Virus record (IMG/VR): IMGVR_UViG_3300027747_002221
Location: 158,056 to 222,055 of that record
Strand: one strand, 5' to 3'
DNA length: 64,000 bases
Below are positions 16,696 to 31,346 of this stretch, in pieces. The notes beneath the pieces were generated by a model. It did no database searches and was not told the DNA's origin. It worked only from the letters and a program-made list of their open reading frames with translations. Numbering within the stretch: position 1 is the first letter of the stretch; every line of letters begins with the position of its first letter. The translations under genes and the position numbers were made by a program.

Positions 16696-17640
16696 TTATC
16701 CGGTAAATGTTATCGTTCCTGGTCCAGTAAATGTATAATATACATTGCCATTTGAAGTAGTAACAGTGTTACTACCTGTAATATTAGATGTTGCAGTAAA
16801 ATATGCAGGATGTGCAAAAATAGCCACGCCTGATCCGCCAGCTCCGCTTGCCGATGTGGCGGTGTGTGCACCAGCACCACCTCCACCGCCGGTATTTACG
16901 TTACCGGCAACAGCCTGGAATGCTGTACCTGGCGGATTCTCTCCGCCGCTCCGTCCGCCTCCGCCGAGGCCACCGGGACTAGGAGCAACGGGAGAAAAAC
17001 TATAATCTGCAGCTCCACCGCCGCCGCCGGCATAATAATTACCATTTACCCATGCATTACCATCGCCGCCATATCCTTGTAATGTTCCAGTTTTTCCTGT
17101 AGTACCAGCGCCACCGCCCCCACCGCCATACTGTCCGCCACCTGTTCTTGAATTTCCTGGGGCGCCAGGATTTCCCTGTCCTGCTGTACCTGTACCGCCC
17201 GTATTGTTTGGGCCTCCACTACCTGCTGAATTTCCTGCACCTCCGCCCGATCCCCCGGGACGACCATTGTACTGTGGTGAGAAGTATCCTGTGCCGCCAC
17301 CGCCACCGCCTGCAGCAGTTAATGTGCCTGTTAACGGAGAAGCTAAGATTGAGGGTGTACCGGGTTCGCCCCAGTTACCGCCATATGGCGCGCCAGCATT
17401 TCCTGCACCACCGCCACCTATTTGTGTAACGGCAAAGCTAGCAAACACTCCTGTTGATAATACAAAACTGTTTGCAATATATCCACCTGCACCACCGCCG
17501 CCACCATAATAATTGGCACCTCCACCGCCGCCTCCGCCAACCAATAGATATGATAATGTAAAGGGCGGGGGTGGGGGTGGCGGTGGTTCGATGTATTGTG
17601 CGCCGCCAGATAATACTGCGCCGCCTGTTAAAATTAACAT
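16696..17640 (-). CDS. Glycine-rich domain protein (array member)
   Basis: ILTGG..SGG + P8 linker + polyglycine domain; closest to 19834..20760. Confidence 0.8.
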   Translation of the reverse strand: MLILTGGAVLSGGAQYIEPPPPPPPPFTLSYLLVGGGGGGGANYYGGGGGAGGYIANSFVLSTGVFASFAVTQIGGGGAGNAGAPYGGNWGEPGTPSILASPLTGTLTAAGGGGGGTGYFSPQYNGRPGGSGGGAGNSAGSGGPNNTGGTGTAGQGNPGAPGNSRTGGGQYGGGGGGAGTTGKTGTLQGYGGDGNAWVNGNYYAGGGGGAADYSFSPVAPSPGGLGGGGRSGGENPPGTAFQAVAGNVNTGGGGGAGAHTATSASGAGGSGVAIFAHPAYFTATSNITGSNTVTTSNGNVYYTFTGPGTITFTG

Positions 17641-17649
17641 ATTATTTCC

Positions 17650-18792
17650 TTAAAATAAGATTGTACCTGAGCTGGTAAATTGATAAACTCTATATCCACC
17701 ACTTACTGTTATTGTAGGTGAGCCGGTAGTTGTAGTAGCTGCTGTGTAAGTATCAGGATAACGTATAATTACTATACCTTTACCGCCTGCACCGCTTGGA
17801 CCACCGCCACCTCCGCCTCCACCGGTATTTTCTGCTCCGTCTAATATGCAGTTTGCAATGGCATTAGTTTGCCCTGGTTTTGCACCACCGCCGCCTGCGC
17901 CGCCATACCCTACTCTACGTCCTGCGCCGCCACCTGCATAATACCTACCTGTACTAGTAATTGCTACTCCTGTATTTGTAGCTGTACCGTTTACATTCAT
18001 GTAATAAATACCTGTACTACCTGTACCCGTACCTCTTGCAATTATATACGAATTAGCTGGAATTCCGGTACCAGTAACTTGTGTACCTACATCAATTATT
18101 CCATCACTAACTGCGGTTACAGTTAATGTATTATTTGAGGAAAATACTGATGCTGTTCCAGTGAAAGGAATTGTTGCATTGCTTTTTACCCCAATGCCAC
18201 CAAAGCCCTCTGTAGCGGCTGTGCCACCTTGACCACCTGCACCACCACCACCCGAACCGTTATCGTTACTATTATTTGTACCGCAATCATATCCCTGGCC
18301 GGTAGTTCCTAAACCTTGTACACCCATAATTTGGGCGGCACCTCCACCACTACCACCATTACCAACACCTTCTGTGTCATAACGGCGAGGCGAAGTGCCA
18401 GAGCTGTTTGGTCCGCCAGCGCCGCCACCAAGTGATGTAATTGTTGTTATACCACTACCAGATATGGACGAGTTACTACCTTTAAATCCGGAAGTTTCTT
18501 CACCATTTACGCTTGCACCACCTGCACCAACTGTAATAGTGTATGTTACATTTGAACTAATACCAGTTAAGACAGATTCTGCATTTGCACCTCTACCTGA
18601 AGATTCGCCGGCGATTGAAGAACGATATCCACCAGCACCACCGCCACCTGAGCCAATTGCATCATATCCTCCACCGGAGCCGCCGCCTGCAACAACTATA
18701 AATTCTAACGTAGTAGGGGGAGGAGGTGGGGGAGGAGGTATATATGTTGCGCCTCCAAATATTGTTGCTCCGCCTGTGATTGTAATTGGCAT
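17650..18792 (-). CDS. Glycine-rich domain protein with an inserted beta module
   Basis: ITITGG + P8; insertion SSNNTLTVTAVSDGIIDVGTQVTGTGIPANSYI...GTGSTGIYYMN. Confidence 0.8.
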   Translation of the reverse strand: MPITITGGATIFGGATYIPPPPPPPPTTLEFIVVAGGGSGGGYDAIGSGGGGAGGYRSSIAGESSGRGANAESVLTGISSNVTYTITVGAGGASVNGEETSGFKGSNSSISGSGITTITSLGGGAGGPNSSGTSPRRYDTEGVGNGGSGGGAAQIMGVQGLGTTGQGYDCGTNNSNDNGSGGGGAGGQGGTAATEGFGGIGVKSNATIPFTGTASVFSSNNTLTVTAVSDGIIDVGTQVTGTGIPANSYIIARGTGTGSTGIYYMNVNGTATNTGVAITSTGRYYAGGGAGRRVGYGGAGGGGAKPGQTNAIANCILDGAENTGGGGGGGGPSGAGGKGIVIIRYPDTYTAATTTTGSPTITVSGGYRVYQFTSSGTILF

Positions 18793-18804
18793 CTTATTTC
18801 CTAA

Positions 18805-19761
18805 TTAAAATGTGATTGTTCCTGAGCTGGTCCAAATATATATTCTATATCCACCTTCTATAATAACATTTGGACTGCCCGTAGTATTCGATGCGGCTGT
18901 GTATGTATCTGCATATCTAATAATAGCTACACCTTTTCCGCCGTTCCCTCCACTTGCTGATCCTGCTGGGTATGAAACTCCTCCACCACCACCGCCTGTG
19001 CCTGAAGTTCCATTTGTTCCTGGTATACTCGCGCCGGTGGCGCCTGCTCCGCCACCACCAGCTCCACCAGCTCCACCTGCGGCACTTGCTCCACCCCCAC
19101 CGCCGCCGCCGGCGAAATATACATTACTGCCAACAACATTTCCTATATTATAAGTTGTGGCTTGTGTTGTAGTAATGATTGTCGAAACTTTACCGATACC
19201 ACCCGCTTTGCCTGTAGTGCCAACGCTCGCCCCGTCCTCACCTGCAGCACCTGCTCCACCTCCGCCTCCGCCTGAATAAGCTCCGCCAGTACCACCACGA
19301 TTACCAAATCCTCCACTAGCACTAGTAGGTTGTAGTCCTGCCCCATATGTGGTATGATCGGCTCCGTTCCACGATGCTCCGCCACCTGAACCACCTGCTG
19401 TGGCATTTGTATATGGACCATAAAAACCACCCGTGCCTCCACCAATAGCTATAACATTACTCGAAGCCAAGATAGATGAGTTCGAACCATTATTGCCGCC
19501 GCCGCCGGTGCCGCTTACGCCTGTTCCACCTGCTCCAACAATTACTGTTATGAGAGACCCTATGGTAATAGGTAATGCAGTATTTGCTACATATCCTCCT
19601 GCACCACCACCACCGCACCCTAAATTAGGAGCACTTGCGCCCGAACCACCGCCAGCTACTACCAGATATTCTACTGAACTAAGTACCGGTGGAGGAGAAG
19701 GTGGAGGAGGTGTTAAATTAAATCCTGAAAGTGATACGCCGCCTGAGATTGTAATTGGCAT
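18805..19761 (-). CDS. Glycine-rich domain protein (array member)
   Basis: ITISGG + PPPPSPPP + VEYLVVAGGG. Confidence 0.8.
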   Translation of the reverse strand: MPITISGGVSLSGFNLTPPPPSPPPVLSSVEYLVVAGGGSGASAPNLGCGGGGAGGYVANTALPITIGSLITVIVGAGGTGVSGTGGGGNNGSNSSILASSNVIAIGGGTGGFYGPYTNATAGGSGGGASWNGADHTTYGAGLQPTSASGGFGNRGGTGGAYSGGGGGGAGAAGEDGASVGTTGKAGGIGKVSTIITTTQATTYNIGNVVGSNVYFAGGGGGGGASAAGGAGGAGGGGAGATGASIPGTNGTSGTGGGGGGVSYPAGSASGGNGGKGVAIIRYADTYTAASNTTGSPNVIIEGGYRIYIWTSSGTITF

Positions 19762-19769
19762 CTTATTTC

Positions 19770-19830
19770 CTACCTAAATGTAATTGTTCCAGATTGCCAG
19801 AATCTGAAAATGATGTTTTGCGTTTGCATA
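19770..19830 (-). pseudogene. 3' end remnant of a deleted glycine-rich paralogue
   Basis: Removing one A gives YANANIIFRFWQSGTITFR*, versus YANANIIYRFWQSGTIIFN* in 20769..21719. Confidence 0.75.
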
Positions 19831-19833
19831 AAT

Positions 19834-20760
19834 TTATCCAACGAATCTTATTGTGCCAGGACCAGTAAATGTATAATATACATTGCCATCTAAAGTAGTA
19901 ACAGTATTACTACCTGTAATATTAGATGTTGCGGTAAAGTACGAAGGATGTGCAAAAATAACTACCCCTGATCCTCCAGATCCTCCGGCAGTGGCTCCAC
20001 CTGCCGGATGGGAACCTGCGCCGCCACCGCCCCCAGTATTTACGTTGCCTGCAAGAGCAAGGAATGTTGTTCCCGGAGGATTTGCGCCGGATCCTCGACC
20101 GCCGCCGCCTAAACCACCAGGAGAAGGTGATAGGTTAGCAAAATTATAATCTTGCCCACCTCCTCCTCCGCCTGCATAGTAATTACCATTTATCCATGCA
20201 TTACCGTCACCACCTTGACCTTGCAAGGGACCTGTTCTTCCTGCAGTACCAGCACCACCGCCCCCACCTCCAGTTTGTCCAAGGGGTGGTCTTGAATTTG
20301 CAATTCCGCCAGGATTTCCTTGTCCAGCTGTACCTGCACCTCCAGTATTAGCTGGTCCTGAGTTGCCAGATGGATTTGCTGCTCCGCCACCCGATCCGCC
20401 AGATAGTCCATTAAAGTTAACGCCATCATTTGTACCGCCACCACCACCACCTACGGCAATAAGATTTGCACTAAATGCTGCAGAAGATAGGGTTGACGGG
20501 GTGCCACTTGCACCTGCTGCACCGCCCCCAGCACCCCCGCCCCCCAGTGTAAAATTAAAACTATACGAAGATAAGGTGGGCACCACAATACTATTGGCAA
20601 TATAGCCTCCAGCACCGCCGCCTCCAGCATAAAATGCCCCGCCGCCGCCACCCCCGCCTGCTACTAATAGATAACTTAATGTAAAGGGTGGTGGTGGCGG
20701 AGGTGGAGGGGTAAGGGTAAGCCCTGAAAATATTACACCGCCGCTAATTGTTAATGCCAT
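19834..20760 (-). CDS. Glycine-rich domain protein (array member)
   Basis: LTISGG + P8 + FTLSYLLVAGGG. Confidence 0.8.
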   Translation of the reverse strand: MALTISGGVIFSGLTLTPPPPPPPPFTLSYLLVAGGGGGGGAFYAGGGGAGGYIANSIVVPTLSSYSFNFTLGGGGAGGGAAGASGTPSTLSSAAFSANLIAVGGGGGGTNDGVNFNGLSGGSGGGAANPSGNSGPANTGGAGTAGQGNPGGIANSRPPLGQTGGGGGGAGTAGRTGPLQGQGGDGNAWINGNYYAGGGGGGQDYNFANLSPSPGGLGGGGRGSGANPPGTTFLALAGNVNTGGGGGAGSHPAGGATAGGSGGSGVVIFAHPSYFTATSNITGSNTVTTLDGNVYYTFTGPGTIRFVG

Positions 20761-20768
20761 ATTGTTTC

Positions 20769-21719
20769 CTAATTAAAAATAATTGTTCCGGATTGCCAGA
20801 ATCTGTAGATGATGTTGGCATTGGCATAGGTTACGTTTGGTGAACCTGTGGTTGTTGCAGTTGCAAATGTATTTGGATAACGAATAAACGCAATACCAGA
20901 ACCACCAGCAACACCATTAATAAATGGTGATCCGCTTGGGGAGGTTCCTCCACCGCCTGCACCACCTCCAGTATTTACGGTACCTACAGTACCCAAACCT
21001 GAGCCCACCGCCCCTGCGCCACCGCCACCTAAACCGCCTGTGCCTGCAGTTCCTCTACCGTTCCATGTGCCGCCACCACCACCGCCAGCATAATACACAT
21101 TAGCACCTGTTATTGTAGAGGGTGATCCGTCTCCGCCTGAACCAGCACCACCAGCTCCGCCAGATCCACCAACTGCTCCTGCACCACCTCCACCCCCACC
21201 TCCATAATTATTACCAGGTGAACCCGACCCACCAGGATTGCCTTGTCCAGGCGTCCCTGTTCCGGCAGCACCTGCCGTTGGAGCAGGACCATAGCCTCCA
21301 CCTCCACCTGATCCTCCAGGTTTTCCTGCATAACCAGTAGCAGAAGTTATACCGCCACCGCCACCGCCGCCAATGGCAATTACATTTGATGCATAGGATG
21401 CTGCAGTTATCGAAGTATTTGCGCCATTTGCACCTGCAAGAGTAGCTTCTACGTTAGCAGAACCTATACCTCCAGCACCACCTGCGCCAACTGTTATTGT
21501 ATATAACGTACCGGGAGTGACTGCCAATGCACTATTGGTTATTAATCCTCCTGCGCCAGCTCCAGCAACACCACCATCATTACCAACAGTGGCCCCTGAA
21601 CCACCGCCCCCCGCAACAACTAAATATTGTACTGAACTAAGTGGGACAGGTGGAGGTGGTTCAGATGCATATAACGCGCCGCCTACTAATGCCATTCCGC
21701 CTGTGATTGTAATTGACAT
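20769..21719 (-). CDS. Glycine-rich domain protein (array member)
   Basis: ITITGG..GG + EPPPPVP + VQYLVVAGGG. Confidence 0.8.
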   Translation of the reverse strand: MSITITGGMALVGGALYASEPPPPVPLSSVQYLVVAGGGGSGATVGNDGGVAGAGAGGLITNSALAVTPGTLYTITVGAGGAGGIGSANVEATLAGANGANTSITAASYASNVIAIGGGGGGGITSATGYAGKPGGSGGGGGYGPAPTAGAAGTGTPGQGNPGGSGSPGNNYGGGGGGGAGAVGGSGGAGGAGSGGDGSPSTITGANVYYAGGGGGGTWNGRGTAGTGGLGGGGAGAVGSGLGTVGTVNTGGGAGGGGTSPSGSPFINGVAGGSGIAFIRYPNTFATATTTGSPNVTYANANIIYRFWQSGTIIFN

Positions 21720-21728
21720 ATTATGTTC

Positions 21729-22646
21729 CTAACTAAATGTGATTGTTCCTGAGCTATAGAAGTTGTATACAACATTTCCACCTGAAGATGTTACAACTAC
21801 ATTAGCTCCTGTGGTATTTGCAGCAGAATATGCAGAAGGATGACGCAAAACAACTAATCCAGACCCGCCGGTTGCTCCCACCCCTCCATACGAACTAGCC
21901 CAACCGCCACCGCCACCGCCACCACCAGTATTAGTATTACCATCTATGCCGGCATTATTACTGAAATTACCAGCGCCACCGCCGCCTGTGCCACCTGTAC
22001 CTTGTGTACCTGGTCCATTTCTAGTTCCGCCTCCACCGCCGCCTGCGTAATTTAATCCAGTTATACTAGATGATGTGCCAGCTCCACCATTACCAGCAAC
22101 ACCCGGTGTTATCCCATTTGCATTTACACCTGCAGAAGCAGAGCCACCGCCACCGCCACCCAAATACGCGGGTGAAGTAGTGCCTGTGCCGCCTGCGTAT
22201 CCTTCTACCGGACTATAACTGCCTTCATTTCCTGTGCCTCCTAATGGGTGTCCTCCAGAACCACCTCCGCCGGATCCGCCATTTTGTCCCGGAAGCGTAC
22301 CTGGCCCTTGATCTGCGCCGACCCCGCCACCTCCGCCAGTAGTGGAAATACTAACCACACCGCCTATTAATGATGAATTGGCGCCTTTGCCGCCCTGTTG
22401 AAGAGCACCGGCATTGGCCTGCCCTGCAGAACCTCCGCTGCCAACAGTAATAGTATATGGGGTGCCTGGGGCAATAGTTACGGTAGATTGTCTTAATCCT
22501 CCAGCACCACCGCCTCCCCCGCTATTACCGGCACCTCCGCCCCCACCTGCAACTATTAGATAATCTATTAAACTAAGTGGGGGAAGCGGCACAAATACGG
22601 ATAGCCCGTTTGATATTGCCACTCCGCCTGTGAATATAACTGGCAT
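21729..22646 (-). CDS. Glycine-rich domain protein (array member)
   Basis: IFTGG + PLPP + IDYLIVAGGG; C-terminus nearly the same as 12345..13241. Confidence 0.8.
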   Translation of the reverse strand: MPVIFTGGVAISNGLSVFVPLPPLSLIDYLIVAGGGGGAGNSGGGGGAGGLRQSTVTIAPGTPYTITVGSGGSAGQANAGALQQGGKGANSSLIGGVVSISTTGGGGGVGADQGPGTLPGQNGGSGGGGSGGHPLGGTGNEGSYSPVEGYAGGTGTTSPAYLGGGGGGSASAGVNANGITPGVAGNGGAGTSSSITGLNYAGGGGGGTRNGPGTQGTGGTGGGGAGNFSNNAGIDGNTNTGGGGGGGGWASSYGGVGATGGSGLVVLRHPSAYSAANTTGANVVVTSSGGNVVYNFYSSGTITFS

Positions 22647-22647
22647 A

Positions 22648-23046
22648 TTATTTTCCTATTTTTATATGCGTTCTATGTACTCTGCATTGTATTTGGCCAT
22701 TATAATAATCTTCAGTTTCCAATACTCTGCGATCCATTTGTTCTCTTGCCTCAAGATAATTACAAGATCCCTTATTGGGACAAATATGTAATATCTCTCT
22801 TATAAATTTATCTGTTCCAACTGTCTCTACATCCTTTTTAACTTCTTCGGATGAGGACCAATAATCTCGCCAATCTGATTCGACCTTTATACGCTTCTTT
22901 TTGCCCTTAACCTGTTTAGTTTTACGAAACCAAAAAAGTTTTTTACCTATGTATTTCCGTCCAGTAACAGTATTTGTAATCAAATATACATAACCATACG
23001 CAGTTTCTGGTATTTCCTCAAAGGGAATATTATTATAAAGCCACAT
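22648..23046 (-). CDS. GIY-YIG endonuclease, T4 endonuclease II-like size
   Basis: GYVYLITNTVTGRKYIGKK, ESDW..Y.SS, REILHIC, YLEAREQ, YYNG; ATG 23046 after AGGTG. Confidence 0.75.
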   Translation of the reverse strand: MWLYNNIPFEEIPETAYGYVYLITNTVTGRKYIGKKLFWFRKTKQVKGKKKRIKVESDWRDYWSSSEEVKKDVETVGTDKFIREILHICPNKGSCNYLEAREQMDRRVLETEDYYNGQIQCRVHRTHIKIGK

Positions 23047-23065
23047 AAACACCTATCTAAATAAG

Positions 23066-23570: not shown

Positions 23571-24010
23571 GTGTCGATTCCTCTCTTCTTTGCTTCAGTT
23601 TCAAATACTCTTGTTCTTAGATCTGATGAACTAAAGTAATGATCTCGCTTGTTAAAATAAATGTCAATTTTTCTTTTCTCACAGATAACTTTGCCTGTGT
23701 ACTCAGTATCTCTATACTCTTCACCCAAGATACGAACATCAATAGGTAAAGACATAAAGATATCTTCAAGTTCTTTTTCTGTAGAATATACAATAATCTC
23801 ATCGACGTGTTTACAAGCTGCAACTTGTATTTGTCGTTCGATTATGGATTGTACGGGTTTGTTTTTACTTAACCTGTCGATTGTTGGGTCGACTTGGATT
23901 GCTGCGATTAAATGATCGCATTGTCTTTTTGCCTCTTCAAGCATGATAACATGACCAGCATGAAAGAGATCAAAAGTACTGCAAGTAATTCCTATAATTT
24001 TATTACTCAT
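23516..24010 (-). CDS. Cytidylyltransferase, glycerol-3-phosphate CT (TagD)-like
   Basis: GITCSTFDLFHAGH (HxGH), LGEEY, SSSDLR. Confidence 0.85.
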   Translation of the reverse strand: MSNKIIGITCSTFDLFHAGHVIMLEEAKRQCDHLIAAIQVDPTIDRLSKNKPVQSIIERQIQVAACKHVDEIIVYSTEKELEDIFMSLPIDVRILGEEYRDTEYTGKVICEKRKIDIYFNKRDHYFSSSDLRTRVFETEAKKRGIDTWQKINTTSASNVMPSSR

Positions 24011-24474
24011 ATTTGCTCCACTTCAATTTTACATTGATTTAAAAATTCTATACCATTAGTATTTCTATAAGGGGTACGATAGAATACTTTATTTATACCT
24101 GCCACATGAATCATTTTACTACATTCAAAACAAGGTGCATGGGTAATATACATTGTAGCGCCCTCGCCTGATTCTGTCGAACGAGCTAATTTACCTATAG
24201 CATTTGACTCAGCATGAATTACCTCAGCTTTAGTCTTTAATGTATAGTTTGCACCTTCGTATTCTTCGATGGATTGACCGACACCATAAGTAAAAGTTTC
24301 TCGTATTACATCTTCACAGTTGTTATCCCATCCCGCAGGAGTACCATTATAACCTATAGATATAACCCTATCATCTTTAGTTATAATAGCACCAACCTTT
24401 AATCTTCTCGCATAAGATAGATCTGCATATGCCTCCGCAGCCGTCATATGTGCATAATCAATTTTCTTCGGCAT
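24007..24474 (-). CDS. cd: dCMP deaminase
   Basis: RLKVGA, IGYNGTPAG, HAESNAI, THAPCFECSK. Confidence 0.9.
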   Translation of the reverse strand: MPKKIDYAHMTAAEAYADLSYARRLKVGAIITKDDRVISIGYNGTPAGWDNNCEDVIRETFTYGVGQSIEEYEGANYTLKTKAEVIHAESNAIGKLARSTESGEGATMYITHAPCFECSKMIHVAGINKVFYRTPYRNTNGIEFLNQCKIEVEQI

Positions 24475-24640
24475 TCCATTTACCTTCAGGGCATTTTTCC
24501 CATTTAATTAATGTCTTGCCCCATATGGCGCAACCGCACGAATCACAAAATTTTGCACCAATAATAATTTTTTTATGTTCACACGTATCACAAATTTGTC
24601 TGCGAACTATTACGTAGTTTGTTTTTTTATCGGAATCCAT
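24458..24640 (-). CDS. Small Cys-rich protein
   Basis: RRQICDTCEH...CDSCGC...KCPEGKW. Confidence 0.7.
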   Translation of the reverse strand: MDSDKKTNYVIVRRQICDTCEHKKIIIGAKFCDSCGCAIWGKTLIKWEKCPEGKWNAEEN

Positions 24641-24828
24641 TTTTTACACCAATAATTAGGTTTCACCTTAGCATCCCAGGTTTTACAATATTTTGTTCCT
24701 GGTACATATGCCCCACAATTTGCGCAATTTTCTTTACTATTACCTAAAGCATATGCAGGAGGTAATTTTTTATTAATTAAAGTACCATCAGGATACTTTC
24801 TTTCTCTTATCTCATCAAAATTTTTCAT
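24610..24828 (-). CDS. HiPIP-like 4-Cys protein
   Basis: ENCANCGAY-x6-C-x11-WCKKW; ATGA-coupled to nrdB. Confidence 0.6.
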   Translation of the reverse strand: MKNFDEIRERKYPDGTLINKKLPPAYALGNSKENCANCGAYVPGTKYCKTWDAKVKPNYWCKKWIPIKKQTT

Positions 24829-25808
24829 GCAGCCTTTCCCCACACATCATGCCAGTTTCCTGACAAGGCACCTTTTGCGTAGTCTGTTGCTCTGTTTTCA
24901 AAGAAATTAGTATGCGTTGGAGCATTGATCATTTCTTCAACCCATGGTAAAGGATTCTTTTTACGCTTAAAGATGCCTTTTAGTCCAAGACTAATTAGAC
25001 GTCTGTCAGCAATGTAACGAATATATTCCTTTACGTCGTTCTCTGTTAACCCTTCGATAGCGCCAGATTTGAAAGACAGTTCAATAAACTTATCTTCAAG
25101 ACTAACCATCTTCTCCGCAATCGAGTAGATCTTTTCTTTGAGAGTATCATTCCATATCTCCTTATTTTCTTCGATGTAGTTACGGAATAATTTAATCATG
25201 CCCTCGGCGTGTTGTGTCTCATCAACAATAGACCAAGTAACAATTTGTCCCATACCGCGCATCTTACCCATACGAGGGAAGTTAAGTAACATAATAAAGG
25301 AACTGAATAGTTGCATACCTTCAGTAAATGCGCTGAACACCGCAATATGTTCTGCGGTTGAAGCAATCGTACCATTCTTAGATGAAATATCAAGAACAAA
25401 GTCATGCTTATCTTTCATTTCTTGATATTCTAGAAATTGATTGTAAGTTGTTTCTGGTAATCCTAGTGTCTCAATTAAATGAGAATATGCCGCAATATGT
25501 AATGCCTCACGGGCTGCAAAACCCATAAGCATCATTCTTATTTCAGGTTGCGGAAAGTAAGGTAGATAATTTTTGACATATCCACCAGCGACATCAATAT
25601 CTCCCTGAGTAAAGAATCGGAAGATGTGCGTAAGGAATTGTTTTTCTTCATTTGATAATTTCTTTTTCCAATCTTTAACATCCTCATGCATGGGTACTTC
25701 GGTATGTAACCAATGGCTTTGTTCATGTTTTAACCATGCATCATATGCCCAGGGGTAATTAAAGGGTTTAAACGAATTTCTATCATCCGTCATTTTTGTC
25801 TTTTTCAT
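24825..25808 (-). CDS. nrdB: Ribonucleotide reductase class Ia beta subunit
   Basis: FFTQGDIDV, EALHIAAY, FTEGMQLFSSF, SIVDETQH, NFFENRATDY. Confidence 0.95.
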   Translation of the reverse strand: MKKTKMTDDRNSFKPFNYPWAYDAWLKHEQSHWLHTEVPMHEDVKDWKKKLSNEEKQFLTHIFRFFTQGDIDVAGGYVKNYLPYFPQPEIRMMLMGFAAREALHIAAYSHLIETLGLPETTYNQFLEYQEMKDKHDFVLDISSKNGTIASTAEHIAVFSAFTEGMQLFSSFIMLLNFPRMGKMRGMGQIVTWSIVDETQHAEGMIKLFRNYIEENKEIWNDTLKEKIYSIAEKMVSLEDKFIELSFKSGAIEGLTENDVKEYIRYIADRRLISLGLKGIFKRKKNPLPWVEEMINAPTHTNFFENRATDYAKGALSGNWHDVWGKAA

Positions 25809-25823
25809 TTTTGCCTATTCTTT

Positions 25824-26147
25824 TTATACAGAAAAACTACTACCACAACCACAGGTTGTTTCCGCATTTGGATTTTTTATAACAAACTGTGAGCCTTGTA
25901 TATCTTCTTTGTAATCTATGCTTGCACCTTGTAGATACTGCATGCTCATAGCATCTATTAATATTTTAGTTTTTTCGAGAGGTATTTCAAAATCATCCTC
26001 ATTCATTACCTCATCAAATGTAAACCCATAGCTCATTCCACTACAACCACCACCTTGTACAAATGTCCTTAAACATAAATCGGGATTACCCTCTTCTATA
26101 AAAAGATCTAAAATTTTTGTCTTTGCTGATTCTGTTATGGTTATCAT
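25824..26147 (-). CDS. erpA: Fe-S cluster insertion protein, ErpA-like
   Basis: [26 protein letters not shown] ... [12 protein letters not shown]. Confidence 0.85.
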
Positions 26148-26779
26148 TTTTGTCCCTCGTACATTACTGTGTTAGTTTCGCCGAGTGCCCATTTTGAATC
26201 CGTTTCAACTGACCATTTCTTTGTTGCAACTTTAAAGTCTGGGTATTTTAGTTCTTTTGGATTACTACTTGGTTCTAATATGATTAAACGATTATTTGGC
26301 TGAGCAGCAAACTGACCATTATCACACTGGATGAAATTATAAGACTTGTGATCCTCGACATCCTCGCTAAAACCTGTATCAAGTGTGTTAAAATCAGGAT
26401 GAGCACTATCAACTGTAAAAAGATAAACACCATACATCCAATCTCCATTTTTTAATTTAAACTTACACTTCATTGATTGTAACTGTGCTTTCTTTATAAC
26501 AGCTATATCATATGAAAGGCAATCCCACAACTGAAGATAATCTAAAGGTAGAGGTTCTCCCTCAATTGGTTTCCAACAATATGCATGCAGAGGTAATTTA
26601 TCATACAATGCGCCATAATTATTTAGATATGATTCAATACGAAATGCTTGGCCTCTTAGAGACTTAACACTAACCCACCAGCAAGGTTCAAGTTCTCCGT
26701 GACCTTTTTCAAAATCATAAAGAAATTCTTTGCGAACAAAACATTTTACTGTAGGAAGATTTGCTACGATATGTGCCAT
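26144..26779 (-). CDS. Conserved hypothetical protein (211 aa)
   Basis: [48 protein letters not shown]; function unknown. Confidence 0.75.
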
Positions 26780-27106
26780 TTATACCCTAAAACTTTCTCC
26801 GCAACCACAGCGGTCTCGTTCGTTTGGATTTTTAAAATCGAATCCCTCGTTTAGACCATTTCTAACCCAATCCATGGTCAATCCTTTCAGATATATATCA
26901 CTTTTTATATCAACTAAAACTATAAAATCTTTATGTGCGTAATTAATTACACCTACGGTTTCTTCATACTTATCCACATATTCAAGTGTATATGCCAATC
27001 CACTACAACCTGTAGTTTTTACGCCTAGTTTAATACCAACACCCTTACCCCGTTTCTGAAGTTGAGTTTTAATTTTATCATATGCTTTTTCAGTTAACGA
27101 GATCAT
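26780..27106 (-). CDS. iscA: Fe-S cluster assembly protein IscA
   Basis: GVKTTGCSGLAYTLEY ... GLNEGFDFKNPNERDRCGCGESF. Confidence 0.9.
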   Translation of the reverse strand: MISLTEKAYDKIKTQLQKRGKGVGIKLGVKTTGCSGLAYTLEYVDKYEETVGVINYAHKDFIVLVDIKSDIYLKGLTMDWVRNGLNEGFDFKNPNERDRCGCGESFRV

Positions 27107-27473
27107 GTTTCTTCTTATAGTCTAATACTGCAGCCTTTATAGCATCTTCTGCTAAAATAGAACAATGTATTTTTACTGGCGGGAGAGCAAGTTCTTCAGC
27201 AATGGCACTATTTTTGATAGTGAATGCTTCATCCAATGTTTTCCCTTTGACCCATTCTGTAACGAGTGAACTAGAAGCGATTGCGGAACCACATCCATAT
27301 GTCTTGAAGCGAGCATCTCTAATAATACCATCTTCTACCTTTATTTGTAGTTTCATGACGTCGCCACAAGCAGGTGCCCCCACCATACCTGTGCCGATTG
27401 TGTCGTCTGTCTCAAACTTGCCTACATTCCGAGGGTTTTCGTAATGATCGATTACCTTATCTGAGTAGGCCAT
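27090..27473 (-). CDS. iscU: Fe-S cluster scaffold IscU
   Basis: YSDKVIDHYENPRNVG, GAPACGDVM, YGCGSAIAS, LPPVKIHCS. Confidence 0.95.
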   Translation of the reverse strand: MAYSDKVIDHYENPRNVGKFETDDTIGTGMVGAPACGDVMKLQIKVEDGIIRDARFKTYGCGSAIASSSLVTEWVKGKTLDEAFTIKNSAIAEELALPPVKIHCSILAEDAIKAAVLDYKKKHDLVN

Positions 27474-27476
27474 ATA

Positions 27477-27725
27477 TTACCAAGTTACTTCGCCGCTAGA
27501 AATCTTTCTTAGGCCCATATTAATAGCACCCATTAAAAGCATTTGATATTCCGCAGGAACTACAAAGCCATAATTTGTTTGTACTATTACTAATACACCT
27601 GCTACAATATTAGCCCAGAAAGTTTTACTATAGTACCACTTTTTGCCTGTTGCTTCGCTTACCATTGCTTCGTTAACTGCTTCAATAATTTTTTCGTTAA
27701 CTACTGTTTCTTTTTTCGTTGCCAT
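27477..27725 (-). CDS. Small two-TM membrane protein, possibly holin-like
   Basis: KKWYYSKTFWAN followed by two hydrophobic segments; holin role is a guess. Confidence 0.5.
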   Translation of the reverse strand: MATKKETVVNEKIIEAVNEAMVSEATGKKWYYSKTFWANIVAGVLVIVQTNYGFVVPAEYQMLLMGAINMGLRKISSGEVTW

Positions 27726-27783
27726 TTTATTTCCTTATTTTTAGATGTTTACCGCCGCATAATGGGCATTCTTCTTACATAAT

Positions 27784-27951
27784 TTAATTATTTCCCTTGA
27801 CAATATTATCGTCTTTATCTCGGCATTCCGCGCATTCGCACTTATTACAAGAACAAGGGTTAGAAGGGCAGGAGCCCTGACAATGAGCGTCGTGTCCACA
27901 CCTTTGGCATGTGTATCTGACGTATTGTTCATGTAAAAATGGTGTTTGCAT
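27784..27951 (-). CDS. 55 aa Cys/His-rich, metallothionein-like protein
   Basis: CQRCGHDAHCQGSCPSNPCSCNKCECAEC; ATG 27951 just after the nrdA stop. Confidence 0.65.
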   Translation of the reverse strand: MQTPFLHEQYVRYTCQRCGHDAHCQGSCPSNPCSCNKCECAECRDKDDNIVKGNN

Positions 27952-27953
27952 AT

Positions 27954-29765
27954 TTAACCTTCGCAAGCCAAACAAGTATCACCCTCAATTATTGCTTTCA
28001 TATCTAATTCTTTAATAACTTCTCTTTCAATTCTTTTAGAGACTTTATCTGCTTTGCCAATCTTTTCAGAGCGGCAATAGTAAAGGGTTTTCAATCCTTG
28101 CTTCCATGCCATAAAATGTACAGCATGCAAATACATAATATTTGCATCTGGTCTAAAGAACAGATTAACAGATTGTGCTTGATCTATATATTGCTGTCTA
28201 TCGGCGGCGTGTTGGATAACCCAGCGTTGGTCTATTTCCATAGATGTTTTAAATACATCTTTTGTCCAATCATTCATCCAAGTTAAGTGTTGTACTGACC
28301 CGTCATTCGCAATAATTGAAGACCAAATGTCATTATAATCATTTTGAGATATTGTTCCACTATCGCTAGATAAATGATCTTGAATAACTCTATCAAGCCA
28401 TTTATTTTTATTAAGCATAGAACCACTTAGTGTATCTTGTCTATAGGCGTTAGCACGTAATGGCTCAACGGAAGGAGAAGTATTTCCCATAATAATAGAA
28501 GAAGAAGCGTTAGGAGCAATAGCAAGCATATGAGAAAAACGTCTACCTGTACCTGCAGCATCGGGCGCCTCGCCCCTCTCATGTCCTAATTTAAGATTTG
28601 CTTCATCTAATCCTTTTCGAATATGCTTAAAAATTTGTAGGTTTCTTCCCACTGCCATGGACGATTCCCAAGGAATATTATTTTTTTGTAAAAAGGCGTG
28701 CCAGCCTAGGGCTCCAATACCAATGCTACGCTCATTCCGAGCAGAGTAAATAGCCCTGGAAATGGCACTAGGTGCATTATCAATAAAATACTGTAGAACA
28801 TTATCAAGCATTTCAGCAACATCAGCAAGGAAGAGAGGGTCAGATTTCCATTCATCGTAGTACTCCAAATTTAAAGATGACAAACAACATACCGCGGTGC
28901 GTTCTTTATCTGTAGGTAAAATAATCTCAGAACATAAATTAGATTGTTTGATACTTAAACCAAGCTTCTTCTGAAAATCTGGCATCGCTCTGTTACTGGT
29001 ATCAATAAAATGTAGATATGGTTCACCTGTTTGCATTCTCATTTCAATAATACGTTGCCATAATTCTCTAGCTGAAATAGTATCACGTACTTCTCCGGAA
29101 TGAGGATCTTTTAATTCCCATGTATCATCTGCATCTTTATCCAACATACATTTTTCAACTAATTGCATAAAGTTATCAGTAATATTAATACCGTGATGTA
29201 AATTAAGTGTCCTCATATTAGGATCACCTGTTGGTTTACGCATTTCTAAAAATATGAGAATATCCGGATGAGAAATATCAAGATAAGCGGCATAACTACC
29301 CCTACGAGTCCTACCTTGTCTATAAGCGAGAGATGATGCGTCATATGTGCGAAGGTGGGGCATAACTCCAACCGACTTATCATCCGCTGAACGAATTCCA
29401 ATACCAATTCCAACTCCTCCGCCCAGCATACTGAGCCAATTTACTTCCGCCAAACAATCAACCAAGCCTTCAGCACTATCATGTAGATAAGGGAGAAAGC
29501 AAGAAATAGGAAGACCACGCTTACTGCGACCAAAGCTAAGAATGGGAGTAGAATAAGAAAGCCAATGCTTGGATGAGTACTCATAAAGTCTCTGTGAATG
29601 CTTCTCATTAGTGCCAAACGCTTTGGATACATATGCGAACCTTTCCTGAGGAGAAACCTCATCTTCTGTCATATAACTTTCTTTTAATCTTTTAATTCCC
29701 AATTCATCAAATAAACTATCTCTAGTATAATTGACATTAATCCCATGGACTACATCTTTAGTCAT
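27954..29765 (-). CDS. nrdA: Ribonucleotide reductase class Ia alpha subunit, no ATP cone
   Basis: PISCFL, QSNLCSEI, AIAPNASSS, KTLYYCRS, C-terminal CLACEG. Confidence 0.95.
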   Translation of the reverse strand: MTKDVVHGINVNYTRDSLFDELGIKRLKESYMTEDEVSPQERFAYVSKAFGTNEKHSQRLYEYSSKHWLSYSTPILSFGRSKRGLPISCFLPYLHDSAEGLVDCLAEVNWLSMLGGGVGIGIGIRSADDKSVGVMPHLRTYDASSLAYRQGRTRRGSYAAYLDISHPDILIFLEMRKPTGDPNMRTLNLHHGINITDNFMQLVEKCMLDKDADDTWELKDPHSGEVRDTISARELWQRIIEMRMQTGEPYLHFIDTSNRAMPDFQKKLGLSIKQSNLCSEIILPTDKERTAVCCLSSLNLEYYDEWKSDPLFLADVAEMLDNVLQYFIDNAPSAISRAIYSARNERSIGIGALGWHAFLQKNNIPWESSMAVGRNLQIFKHIRKGLDEANLKLGHERGEAPDAAGTGRRFSHMLAIAPNASSSIIMGNTSPSVEPLRANAYRQDTLSGSMLNKNKWLDRVIQDHLSSDSGTISQNDYNDIWSSIIANDGSVQHLTWMNDWTKDVFKTSMEIDQRWVIQHAADRQQYIDQAQSVNLFFRPDANIMYLHAVHFMAWKQGLKTLYYCRSEKIGKADKVSKRIEREVIKELDMKAIIEGDTCLACEG

Positions 29766-29782
29766 TCTTACTCCAATTTTTA

Positions 29783-30058
29783 TTATTTTACTGATTCAAA
29801 AATTTGTTTTTGAATTCGATACCATTCAACCCATGCATCATTTTTGACTGCACATTCATAATATGTCGTATAATTTATTGCTACTGTTTTAGATATATCA
29901 CTTAGCTTAGCATCTTCTTTTAATTTTTCAAGTTGAGGACACTTATTTAAAAGGCTTTCGGGTACATCTGGAAATTTTGCAGTAACAGGAACTGTTGTAG
30001 AACAGGCTGTTAATGTAACAGAAAATAAAACTAAAGTAAAATACTTAAATATATTCAT
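29783..30058 (-). CDS. Putative o-spanin (Rz1-like lipoprotein)
   Basis: Lipobox LTAC, Pro-rich segment, CPQL...YYEC...W; coupled to the upstream TM/coiled-coil gene. Confidence 0.6.
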   Translation of the reverse strand: MNIFKYFTLVLFSVTLTACSTTVPVTAKFPDVPESLLNKCPQLEKLKEDAKLSDISKTVAINYTTYYECAVKNDAWVEWYRIQKQIFESVK

Positions 30059-30501
30059 TTTGGTTGGTCTGCAGCATCATTATGTGCTTTGATAAATTCT
30101 TTAGGGATCTCACAAATACCACCTGGTGCAAATTTTGTATCATATTTAACTATCTCTCTGTCCACATATGTAACAATATCATTACCTCGTCTAGTAATGT
30201 ATTCGGTTTTCCTTACAATCTTTTCCACAATTTTTATATTTTCTTTTGCAGATTCTACCTCGGCTTTTGCTACTTTTTCTTCCATTTCTCTTACTCTAGC
30301 TTCCCATACAGCATTATTTACTAAACCGCCCTCAAGGAAAAGACCTAGTGCTACAAGTATATAGCCTATTATTTTTGCGGGGATTGCGTAGGTTCGAATG
30401 AAGGGAAGGAACCCAAGAAAAGTACTCGCAATTACGGTTATTATACCTGTTGCGAGTATTGCATGAAAAATCCAATTAGGAAGAAAAGATAGTATCCACA
30501 T
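30055..30501 (-). CDS. Putative i-spanin (Rz-like)
   Basis: N-terminal TM segments, coiled coil, C-terminal C.IP..FI..HN.A. Confidence 0.6.
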   Translation of the reverse strand: MWILSFLPNWIFHAILATGIITVIASTFLGFLPFIRTYAIPAKIIGYILVALGLFLEGGLVNNAVWEARVREMEEKVAKAEVESAKENIKIVEKIVRKTEYITRRGNDIVTYVDREIVKYDTKFAPGGICEIPKEFIKAHNDAADQPK

Positions 30502-30504
30502 AAC

Positions 30505-31179
30505 TTATATATCTAATTGCAAATCTTTAGTTAGCGGAAAAATCTTAGAAATAGCCTCAGCGCATGCTTTTGCAACTTTAATATGTTCTTTTTGTGTGCC
30601 GTTTTCGGACCTGAGCTGAATATAGTGTATCCAACTACGTAAAGTCCCAGCCATATAAAGACGACTTTCCATATTACCCTCGGGTAATACCGCCCTTGCT
30701 TGTTCTTTTGCAATACCGTTACTGATAGCCCATTTATATGCATCCATAGATGCTTTTATTACACCTTGTTGTTTTTCTTTCCATAAACGGTCTAATTCTC
30801 TATCCTCTGAATTGGTATAATCTAAATCTACAGAATTTTGTCTGTTTTTCTGATCCTGTTTACGAGCATCACGTACGACAAAATTTAAATCTTTTGTTGG
30901 ATCAGCATATCGTTGACTATATTCCTGAAATGAAAACGACCTATGCCGTAACATTTGTCTTGCAATGTCTCTTGTTGTTTCAATCTCAAGGGTAAGAGAA
31001 ACCATTTCCAAAGGAGACCAATGCTTATTGGCAATAAGATATTTAATTAACTTTTCAGAAGTTTCCTTATTGCCTTGATTAGATGGATTTGAAACTCTAG
31101 CACAAAATGCTACGAGTTCTGTCATATTCTCTGCAAAGTATTCTGCGGGTTGGGAGTATGAGTGTAATTTAACTTTCAA
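30505..31179 (-). CDS. thyX: Flavin-dependent thymidylate synthase
   Basis: HWSPLEM, RQMLRHRSFSFQEYSQRY, EQARAVLP, LRSWIHY; likely TTG start at 31179. Confidence 0.95.
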   Translation of the reverse strand: MKVKLHSYSQPAEYFAENMTELVAFCARVSNPSNQGNKETSEKLIKYLIANKHWSPLEMVSLTLEIETTRDIARQMLRHRSFSFQEYSQRYADPTKDLNFVVRDARKQDQKNRQNSVDLDYTNSEDRELDRLWKEKQQGVIKASMDAYKWAISNGIAKEQARAVLPEGNMESRLYMAGTLRSWIHYIQLRSENGTQKEHIKVAKACAEAISKIFPLTKDLQLDI

Positions 31180-31346
31180 CGCAAAACACCATCCCATCTA
31201 TATGTTCTCATTGGTTTATCTTGTTCATATTTTATTGCAGCTTGCCATGCCTGCCATAGTAATTCTCTAACTTTGGCAGTTGGTATTTCTCTTAATTCAA
31301 AGGTATCAAATAACCAAGTATCAAATGCTTGTTTATTGTTATCCAT
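31176..31346 (-). CDS. Small hypothetical protein (56 aa, not in ORF track)
   Basis: MDNNKQAFDTWLFDTFEL...WQAWQAAIKYEQ...YRWDGVLR; fills the gap and couples to thyX. Confidence 0.6.
   Translation of the reverse strand: MDNNKQAFDTWLFDTFELREIPTAKVRELLWQAWQAAIKYEQDKPMRTYRWDGVLR

What the first reader, a model, noticed from the sequence alone, without database searches (positions are those of the whole stretch)
24825..29765. Fe-S assembly cassette (iscU, iscA, erpA) inserted between nrdA and nrdB
Seen: nrdA, Cys/His mini-protein, TM protein, iscU, iscA, unknown, erpA, nrdB, HiPIP-like, Cys-rich gene, with minimal gaps. All cluster-ligand residues and the LPPVK chaperone motif are intact; no iscS or hscAB in the window. 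Established: single Fe-S carrier genes occur in phages, and class Ia RNR uses a di-iron centre, not Fe-S. Inference: a scaffold plus two carriers redirects host IscS output and iron to phage clients (radical SAM, HiPIP-like, NrdB, 2OG-Fe oxygenases) during infection.
Basis: partly seen in the sequence, partly recalled or inferred. Interest (0 to 1): 0.6.

Follow-up and report, generated by a model that had tools for sequence, protein, structure and literature searches.

The report
Phage Fe-S assembly genes inside RNR operon
A freshwater T4-like phage carries working-looking copies of an iron-sulfur scaffold (IscU) and two carriers (IscA-like, ErpA) in a variable slot between its two ribonucleotide reductase genes; phage Fe-S helper genes are already known, but their repeated placement beside reductase genes and a small HiPIP-like protein is not described in the papers I searched.

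Summary
On the minus strand the order is nrdA, a 55-aa Cys-rich protein, an 82-aa membrane protein, iscU, an iscA-like gene, a 211-aa protein, erpA, nrdB, a HiPIP-like gene, a zinc-ribbon-like gene and dCMP deaminase. All are tightly packed. IscU and ErpA pass NCBIfam equivalog cut-offs and all ligand residues are intact.

The whole 222-kb phage genome has no IscS, HscA/B or Fdx. It does encode about 6 radical-SAM candidates and 6 2OG-Fe(II) oxygenases.

It is not one inserted cassette. The 211-aa protein and the Cys-rich mini-protein are resident RNR neighbours. iscU-iscA and erpA come and go independently among close relatives.

Viral IscU, IscA and ErpA each group apart from bacterial ones, are under strong purifying selection, and occur in at least 598 IMG/VR contigs, never beside iscS in 80 examined.

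Two things appear new. Fe-S genes lie in or beside class I RNR operons in two unrelated phage lineages. A conserved HiPIP-like gene is start/stop-coupled to nrdB, at the position of E. coli yfaE.

Verdict: a new variant of a known kind, of moderate interest.

The parts
27954..29765 (-). nrdA, class I ribonucleotide reductase alpha subunit (603 aa, short form)
   Evidence: NF006577 734 bits over its cut-off; Pfam Ribonuc_red_lgC/lgN
27784..27951 (-). 55-aa Cys/His-rich mini-protein (9 Cys). It is the resident occupant of the nrdA-nrdB slot.
   Evidence: ORF seen. Relatives at 45-88% identity keep the Cys pattern. In L220 and L216 it is the only gene between nrdA and nrdB. No family match.
27477..27725 (-). 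82-aa predicted membrane protein of unknown role
   Evidence: ORF with a Shine-Dalgarno-like AAGGA upstream. Found only in 9 close relatives that also carry iscU.
27090..27473 (-). iscU, Fe-S cluster scaffold
   Evidence: TIGR01999 212 bits against 192.4. All cluster ligands and LPPVK are present. The ligands are identical in 80 of 80 viral loci. dN/dS is 0.02-0.07.
26780..27106 (-). iscA-like A-type carrier (type II)
   Evidence: TIGR00049 passed; TIGR02011 below its cut-off. Three Cys are present. It falls in a clade of 67 viral sequences, SH-aLRT 99.
26144..26779 (-). p211, phrog_3704 family. Predicted as two Tudor/SH3-like beta-barrels. It is an RNR neighbour, not an Fe-S protein.
   Evidence: phrog_3704 E 2e-81. 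Model pLDDT 92.6. Only Tudor-like matches, Z about 6. No conserved Cys or His. It lies between nrdA and nrdB in HTVC008M and in L177/L178, which have no Fe-S genes.
25824..26147 (-). erpA, A-type carrier (type I)
   Evidence: NF010147 161 bits against 117. Three Cys are present. It falls in a viral clade of 15, SH-aLRT 100.
24825..25808 (-). nrdB, class I RNR beta subunit with a di-metal site and radical Tyr
   Evidence: NF007186 444 bits. Ligands and Tyr108 read from the sequence.
24610..24828 (-). HiPIP-like 72-aa protein with four Cys, start/stop-coupled (ATGA) to nrdB
   Evidence: Family profile against PDB HiPIP 3h31, E 7e-5. 15 of 31 family members hit PF01355. The top four Foldseek rows are HiPIPs, though weak. 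The four Cys are identical in 80 of 80 loci. It lies within 400 nt after nrdB in 53 of 71 loci. ATGA overlap seen.
24458..24640 (-). 60-aa CxxC...CxxC zinc-ribbon-like protein
   Evidence: phrog_13558. Follows the HiPIP-like gene in 64 of 80 loci. The homologue in L183 hits a double zinc ribbon weakly.
24007..24474 (-). dCMP deaminase, downstream end of the nucleotide-metabolism module
   Evidence: PF00383 E 3.7e-21
30505..31197 (-). thyX, upstream part of the same module
   Evidence: PF02511 E 1.2e-45
22648..23052 (-). SegE-like GIY-YIG homing endonuclease near the module, a possible driver of local mosaicism
   Evidence: PF19835 131 bits

Best explanation
The three genes are functional viral auxiliary genes: an IscU scaffold, an IscA-like type II carrier and an ErpA type I carrier.

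The phage has no cysteine desulfurase, HscA/B or ferredoxin. The phage IscU must therefore receive sulfur from the host's IscS. It keeps the LPPVK motif through which IscU is released by the host Hsc chaperones. The two carriers would then pass clusters to apo-proteins. This raises or redirects Fe-S supply during infection towards the phage's own Fe-S proteins: the HiPIP-like protein in the same module and five or six radical-SAM enzymes elsewhere in the genome.

The genes sit in a variable accessory slot of the phage's class I RNR operon. In related phages the slot holds thioredoxin, erpA alone, iscU alone, the trio, or nothing beyond a resident Cys-rich mini-protein. They are packed for co-expression with the nucleotide-metabolism genes.

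Shown: gene identities, intact ligands, purifying selection, viral clades, absence of IscS in the genome, presence of phage clients, and the modular gain and loss of the genes.

Inferred: use of host IscS and HscBA, the direction of cluster flow, and co-transcription.
For: - Family scores and ligands are.
- The ligands are identical in every viral copy examined.
- dN/dS is 0.02-0.2 despite high (often saturating) dS of 0.8-4.5.
- 0 of 80 viral loci have iscS or hscA beside iscU, against 80 of 80 bacterial loci with iscS as a control.
- The virus/bacteria label needs only 3 changes on the IscU tree, against 54 for shuffled labels.
- Viral IscA and ErpA each fall in a viral-only clade with SH-aLRT 99-100.
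- The 222-kb genome has no PF00266, HscA, HscB, Fdx, IscR, Grx or Trx.
- It has 6 Radical_SAM candidates (2 over the cut-off) and 6 2OG-Fe(II) oxygenase hits.
- The slot contents vary among 80 related loci. On an nrdB tree erpA needs at least 4 changes and iscU at least 3.
- Population variants lacking parts of the slot appear in run X16.
- The same interpretation was published for marine T4-like viral genomes (PMC5332604).
Against: - There is no experimental evidence for cluster binding or transfer.
- Transcription is not shown. RNA-library contigs cover pieces at 95-97% identity, but DNA carry-over is not excluded.
- The promoter and terminator scan was no better than shuffles.
- The host is unknown, so it is not shown that the host has an ISC system with IscS and HscBA.
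- The recurrent placement beside RNR genes in an unrelated lineage hints at a more specific role than general supply.
Confidence: 0.55

Rival explanations
1. RNR-cofactor module. The HiPIP-like protein coupled to nrdB plays the part of E. coli YfaE. It would give the electron needed to build or restore the di-iron tyrosyl-radical cofactor of NrdB. IscU, IscA and ErpA are kept in the operon mainly to mature that small Fe-S protein, and perhaps the Cys-rich mini-protein, so that phage dNTP synthesis does not stall.
For: - The HiPIP-like gene overlaps the nrdB stop (ATGA) and follows nrdB in 53 of 71 related loci. This is the position yfaE holds in the E. coli nrdAB operon (Wu et al. 2007, cited in PMC8463856).
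- In L195 and L196 iscA-erpA run straight into the HiPIP-like gene, with iscU a few genes upstream and no nrdB in between.
- Fe-S genes lie inside or beside class I RNR operons in a second lineage whose NrdA is only 22% identical: L038, L039, L050 and L075. There they sit with glutaredoxin (L038, L039, L050, L075) and, in L050, a superoxide dismutase.
- An RNR gene lies within the flank, on the same strand, in 29 of 80 IscU loci.
Against: - HiPIPs have high potentials and are poor reductants of a diferric centre (general knowledge).
- The second lineage has no HiPIP-like gene.
- L027 and L047 carry the trio away from nrdA and nrdB.
- 11 HiPIP-like loci sit in another context.
- Many relatives have the HiPIP-like gene but no Fe-S assembly genes (46 of 80).
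- The related loci are largely one lineage, so the counts are not independent events.
Confidence: 0.25
2. Iron chaperone. The A-type carriers, and perhaps IscU, bind mononuclear iron and load it directly into apo-NrdB.
For: erpA alone sits between nrdA and nrdB in 13 related loci. IscA has been proposed as an iron donor (Ding et al. 2004, cited in PMC8226683).
Against: The iron-chaperone role of A-type carriers is contested, and no link to NrdB metallation is established. All three cluster-ligand Cys are conserved, as expected for cluster carriers.
Confidence: 0.07
3. Takeover decoy. The phage IscU titrates host IscS or HscA to starve host Fe-S proteins rather than to build clusters.
For: There is no phage IscS. 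IscU is 82-88% identical to Burkholderiales IscU, so it would fit the host partners.
Against: A decoy would not need every cluster ligand, nor two downstream carriers. All of these are conserved under strong purifying selection.
Confidence: 0.05
4. Artefact: host DNA, recent capture or a chimeric assembly.
For: IscU is very like bacterial IscU. Some 'phage' database records with iscU are really bacterial chromosome.
Against: - The genes are flanked by phage genes on both sides.
- The arrangement is collinear in independent assemblies at 93.6-99.7% identity.
- The sequences fall in viral clades.
- There is no iscS or hscBA beside iscU.
Confidence: 0.01

Closest known systems
Viral Fe-S assembly auxiliary genes (IscU and A-type carriers) in marine T4-like and HMO-2011-type viral genomes (Nishimura et al. 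2017, PMC5332604; ISME J 2022, PMC9038755)
   Same: IscU and/or A-type carrier genes occur in tailed phages without iscS. They co-occur with phage radical-SAM genes. The same proposed role was given: feeding host and viral Fe-S proteins.
   Different: Here the scaffold and both carrier types are together, in a freshwater phage, inside the nrdA-nrdB slot and next to a HiPIP-like gene. Neither the RNR placement nor a HiPIP-like partner turned up in my term searches of those papers or of the paper library.
Proteobacterial isc operon (iscR-iscS-iscU-iscA-hscB-hscA-fdx)
   Same: IscU is 82-88% identical to Burkholderiales IscU. An iscA-like gene follows iscU directly. LPPVK and all ligands are kept.
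   Different: IscS, IscR, HscB, HscA and Fdx are absent from the whole genome. ErpA, which is unlinked in bacteria, is adjacent here. The viral sequences cluster almost entirely apart from the bacterial ones (3 label changes on the IscU tree against 54 when shuffled; viral-only IscA and ErpA clades with SH-aLRT 99-100).
E. coli nrdA-nrdB-yfaE operon (YfaE [2Fe-2S] ferredoxin maintains the NrdB cofactor; Wu et al. 2007)
   Same: A small Cys-ligated Fe-S-type protein gene lies immediately after nrdB.
   Different: The phage protein is HiPIP-like (four Cys, [4Fe-4S] type), not a plant-type 2Fe-2S ferredoxin. No sequence relation to YfaE was tested, and the function is untested.
T4 nrdA-nrdB intergenic region (nrdA.1, nrdA.2, mobE), from my own knowledge
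   Same: The gap between nrdA and nrdB is a variable region in T4-like phages. A homing endonuclease is nearby (SegE-like at 22648-23052).
   Different: Here the slot holds redox and metal-cofactor helper genes rather than a homing endonuclease.
phrog_3704 / cyanomyophage 'PurM' or 'ferredoxin' (T4-like gene cluster 171)
   Same: p211 is 48-52% identical to the cyanophage and HTVC008M proteins.
   Different: Neither annotation holds. It has no Pfam match, no conserved Cys or His, and a predicted double Tudor/SH3-like barrel fold.

Membership tests
IscU scaffold (TIGR01999) | Score over the curated equivalog cut-off | tested here: met
   212 bits against 192.4
IscU scaffold (TIGR01999) | Three Cys, Asp and His cluster ligands, and the LPPVK chaperone motif | tested here: met
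   C36, D38, C61, H103, C104 and LPPVK at 97-101; identical in 80 of 80 viral loci
IscU scaffold (TIGR01999) | Assembles a cluster with IscS and is released by HscA/HscB | not testable with these tools
   Needs biochemistry. No partner is encoded by the phage.
IscA (TIGR02011 equivalog) | Score over the curated cut-off | tested here: not met
   127.9 bits against 150.6. It passes only the A-type-carrier subfamily TIGR00049, 96.6 against 58.8. I therefore call it IscA-like.
A-type carrier (TIGR00049 / PF01521) | The C-x(n)-C-G-C ligand triad | tested here: met
   IscA-like C34, C100, C102; ErpA C35, C99, C101
ErpA (NF010147 equivalog) | Score over the curated cut-off | tested here: met
   161 bits against 117
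HiPIP (PF01355) | Score over Pfam's gathering cut-off | tested here: not met
   16.7 bits against 22 for the window protein. 15 of 31 family members match at E up to 0.1, best 5.3e-5.
HiPIP (PF01355) | Four Cys in the HiPIP spacing, and the HiPIP fold | tested here: inconclusive
   Profile against PDB 3h31, E 7e-5, with all four Cys aligned. The model has pLDDT 74. The top four Foldseek rows are HiPIPs, but E is 0.26-8 and TM 0.29-0.5.
Complete ISC system | A cysteine desulfurase (IscS) with the scaffold | tested here: not met
   No PF00266 match in the 222-kb genome, while the control found it in 14 of 14 genomes. tblastn with IscS, HscA, HscB, Fdx and IscR was blank.
Class I RNR beta subunit with di-metal tyrosyl radical | Six carboxylate/His metal ligands and the radical Tyr | tested here: met
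   NF007186 444 bits. D70, E101, H104, Y108, E163, E197 and H200 read from the sequence. The metal identity was not tested.
Ferredoxin / PurM (database labels of p211) | Cluster-binding Cys, or the PurM fold or family match | tested here: not met
   No Pfam or NCBIfam match. No conserved Cys. The fold is a double Tudor/SH3-like barrel.

The most novel reading that the evidence does not exclude
Phages of at least two unrelated lineages keep Fe-S assembly genes inside their class I RNR operons because RNR activation in the infected cell depends on a small Fe-S electron carrier. Here that carrier would be a HiPIP-like protein translationally coupled to nrdB, acting as a functional analogue of YfaE. 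The phage would then encode a self-contained cofactor-maintenance pathway for RNR: scaffold, carriers, electron donor, NrdB.
Probability: 0.2. Interest if true: 0.7.

Novelty: new variant of a known kind. Interest (0 to 1): 0.4.

Why it matters
How class Ia RNR gets and keeps its di-iron tyrosyl-radical cofactor in vivo is only partly understood. YfaE in E. coli and the Fe-S-dependent Dre2/Grx pathway in yeast are the known cases. A phage operon that puts a scaffold, two carriers and a HiPIP-like protein around nrdB would give a compact, testable system for that question. More modestly, the data show that IscU plus an A-type carrier is a widespread and long-standing viral gene set: at least 598 IMG/VR contigs, distinct viral clades and strong purifying selection. 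That bears on how phages of nutrient-poor lake bacteria cope with iron and Fe-S limitation.

Tried and rejected
- Megablast of the region against GenBank phages gave no match.
- The sigma-70 promoter scan gave 35 sites against 31 expected; the terminator scan gave 10 against 3.9, but none of the minus-strand hits falls in an intergenic gap. It says nothing on co-transcription.
- Complex prediction of NrdB with the HiPIP-like protein gave no verdict. It is no evidence either way.
- The word search for the Cys-rich mini-protein was blank. tblastn on related loci then found homologues at 45-88% identity, so the blank was a limit of sensitivity.
- A profile of the p211 family against PDB sequences gave nothing meaningful. 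Foldseek and VIA gave only generic Tudor/SH3-like barrels at Z about 6, within the range of chance-level fold matches. The database labels 'ferredoxin' and 'PurM' are rejected.
- 'Acinetobacter phage MD-2021a' hits to IscU and ErpA are bacterial chromosome carrying the full isc operon, so I discarded them as phage evidence.
- Host contamination or a chimera was considered and rejected.
- RNA-library contigs cover parts of the region. They cannot show transcription, strand or operon structure.
- The host was not identified.

Full report
**What is there.**
The window is the last 64 kb of a 222,055-bp IMG/VR virus record rated complete by CheckV. The gene content is that of a T4-like myophage related to pelagimyophage HTVC008M and the Kyanoviridae. 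In 24458-31197 all genes lie on the minus strand. Their order is:
- thyX and two spanin-like genes
- nrdA
- a 55-aa Cys-rich protein
- an 82-aa membrane protein
- iscU
- an iscA-like gene
- a 211-aa protein (p211)
- erpA
- nrdB
- a HiPIP-like gene
- a 60-aa zinc-ribbon-like gene
- dCMP deaminase

IscU (TIGR01999), ErpA (NF010147), NrdA and NrdB pass curated equivalog cut-offs. The iscA-like protein passes only the A-type-carrier subfamily model and falls short of the IscA equivalog. All cluster ligands, the LPPVK motif and the NrdB metal and tyrosyl residues are present. Genes abut or overlap, and nrdB and the HiPIP-like gene share an ATGA. Independent assemblies from other samples are collinear at 93.6-99.7% identity.

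**The phage depends on the host for sulfur and chaperones, and has its own clients.**
No aminotransferase class V (IscS) domain is found in the whole genome, while the control found it in 14 of 14 reference genomes. tblastn with IscS, IscR, HscB, HscA and Fdx finds nothing, nor with glutaredoxin, thioredoxin or SOD. The genome has six Radical_SAM matches, two of them over the cut-off. Five of the six lie at genome positions 0.3-12.7 kb. It also has six 2OG-Fe(II) oxygenase matches.

**These are old viral genes, not recent host captures.**
At least 598 IMG/VR contigs encode an IscU 82-92% identical to this one.
- Of 80 loci fetched, none has iscS or hscA beside iscU.
- Of those 80, 58 have iscU plus iscA, 10 have the full trio, 5 have iscU plus erpA, and 7 have iscU alone.
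- The 80 nearest bacterial IscU loci are almost all Burkholderiales or other Betaproteobacteria at 82-88% identity. All 80 have iscS alongside.
- On a tree of the 161 IscU sequences the virus/bacteria label needs only three changes, against a shuffled mean of 54.
- Viral IscA forms a clade of 67 (SH-aLRT 99) and viral ErpA a clade of 15 (SH-aLRT 100).
- The ligands are identical in every copy.
- dN/dS is 0.02-0.2 at high (often saturating) synonymous divergence (dS 0.8-4.5).

One caveat applies. Both sequence sets were chosen by similarity to the same query, and the proteins are short, so the deep branching order is not resolved.

**It is a variable slot, not one cassette.**
Close relatives without any Fe-S gene have nrdA-p211-nrdB (L177, L178, and HTVC008M) or nrdA-nrdB-p211 (L175). 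The Cys-rich mini-protein is the sole gene between nrdA and nrdB in L216 and L220. It is conserved at 45-88% identity with its Cys pattern intact.

I also examined 80 IMG/VR loci that carry the HiPIP-like gene. The slot contents found were:
- nothing further
- thioredoxin
- erpA alone (13 loci)
- iscU alone
- iscU-erpA
- iscU-iscA-p211-erpA, the window's form (9 loci)
- iscU-iscA-erpA-thioredoxin (7 loci)

On an nrdB tree of 39 loci whose whole slot is visible, erpA needs at least 4 changes and iscU at least 3. Contigs in one lake run show joints that skip the mini-protein, p211, or the whole slot. A SegE-like GIY-YIG endonuclease lies 1.4 kb downstream of the dCMP deaminase gene.

**p211 is neither ferredoxin nor PurM.**
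It has no Pfam or NCBIfam match and no conserved Cys or His. A confident model (pLDDT 92.6) shows two Tudor/SH3-like barrels with only generic structural matches. Its function stays unknown. Its steady neighbourhood is RNR.

**The HiPIP-like gene.**
The family has four invariant Cys. Its profile matches a solved HiPIP at E 7e-5 with all four Cys aligned. Half of its members hit PF01355. The top four Foldseek rows for a medium-confidence model are HiPIPs, though weakly. It follows nrdB within 400 nt in 53 of 71 loci that have room upstream. In L195 and L196 iscA-erpA run directly into it, with iscU a few genes upstream and no nrdB in between. Eleven loci have it in another context. Among isolates, only two pelagiphage podoviruses have weak homologues, annotated as hypothetical.

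**A second lineage shows the same linkage.**
Some large uncultured phages have an NrdA of about 780 aa that is only 22% identical to this one. In them, Fe-S genes again lie inside or beside the RNR operon:
- L038: nrdA-erpA-iscU-aldolase-nrdB-glutaredoxin
- L050: nrdA-erpA-iscU-iscA-Fe/Mn SOD-nrdB
- L075: nrdA-iscU-nrdB-glutaredoxin
- L039: nrdB-iscU-iscA-glutaredoxin

In the commonest synteny, iscU-iscA lies about 3 kb upstream of nrdA. In all, 29 of 80 IscU loci have an RNR gene within the fetched flank, always on the same strand. Many loci are too short to tell. These counts are not corrected for relatedness, so the excess is suggestive only.

**Mechanism.**
The best-supported reading is the published one for viral IscU and A-type carriers (PMC5332604). 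The phage adds scaffold and carrier capacity on top of host IscS and HscBA to mature Fe-S proteins, including its own. The slot is a plastic site that is co-expressed with nucleotide metabolism.

A more specific and more novel reading is that the module serves RNR itself. In that reading the HiPIP-like protein stands where E. coli has yfaE. The ferredoxin YfaE maintains the NrdB cofactor (Wu et al. 2007, cited in PMC8463856). I give this about 0.2-0.25. The reasons for caution are these:
- HiPIPs are poor reductants.
- The second lineage lacks the HiPIP-like gene.
- The trio also occurs away from RNR, in L027 and L047.

**Ecology and expression.**
The region is near-identical in at least seven freshwater metagenome runs. 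Lake metatranscriptome libraries contain contigs 95-97% identical to parts of it. That shows presence in RNA libraries, not transcription.

**Novelty.**
Phage IscU, sufA/iscA-type carriers and erpA have been reported (PMC5332604, PMC9038755, PMC8226683). Searches of the paper library found nothing on their placement in RNR operons or on a HiPIP-like RNR neighbour. I rate it a new variant of a known kind, with interest 0.4.

Noticed in passing
window 26144-26779 (-); L179 4501-5148; L180 4501-5145: The p211 family (phrog_3704, T4-like gene cluster 171) is labelled 'ferredoxin' in RefSeq and 'PurM / phosphoribosylaminoimidazole synthetase' in GenBank for over 100 cyanophage and pelagiphage records. 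Neither label fits. It has no conserved Cys, and the confident model shows two Tudor/SH3-like barrels. In HTVC008M and this lineage it sits between nrdA and nrdB.
   Followed up: yes
window 27784-27951 (-); L216 3547-3717; L220 3829-4026; L223 3175-3351: A 55-aa protein with nine Cys is a conserved resident of the nrdA-nrdB gap at 45-88% identity. It has no family, and a word search of 5.8 billion proteins did not find it. It may be a metal-binding RNR accessory protein.
   Followed up: partly
window about 16696-22646 (-) (G000 174751-180701): Six tandem paralogous genes of 305-380 aa encode proteins with an N-terminal poly-proline stretch and long glycine-rich runs. GC rises to 52%, against about 36% elsewhere. 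They are probably fibre or collagen-like structural proteins.
   Followed up: no
G000 0.3-12.7 kb (outside the window, adjoining its end if the genome is circularly permuted): A cluster of five radical-SAM-like genes is interleaved with four small 2OG-Fe(II) oxygenase genes. It looks like a peptide- or nucleotide-modification island and is a likely major Fe-S client.
   Followed up: partly
L050 4105-4656; L038 6375-7031: In a second phage lineage the nrdA-nrdB gap also holds an Fe/Mn superoxide dismutase (L050) or a class II aldolase-family protein (L038) next to erpA and iscU.
   Followed up: partly
L002 (CAKLQF020000009.1) and related records: Records named 'Acinetobacter phage MD-2021a' in the phage collection carry a full bacterial isc operon together with ppiD, hupB and mfd. 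They are bacterial chromosome, not phage. Several short 'phage' records with IscU or ErpA hits look like the same kind of contamination.
   Followed up: partly
window 25773-27987, 26148-26786, 27737-27959: Contigs in lake RNA-library run X16 join across these spans. Related strains therefore lack the whole slot, p211 alone, or the mini-protein alone. The sides are short (24-150 nt), so the first two joints are weak.
   Followed up: no
window 22648-23052 (-): A SegE-like GIY-YIG homing endonuclease (131 bits) lies at the downstream edge of the nucleotide-metabolism module. Homologues lie in the same relative place in L175, L177, L181 and L182.
   Followed up: partly
L196 300-1013; L198 1724-2425: In some relatives a 233-237-aa ORF of unknown function is inserted between iscU and iscA.
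   Followed up: no
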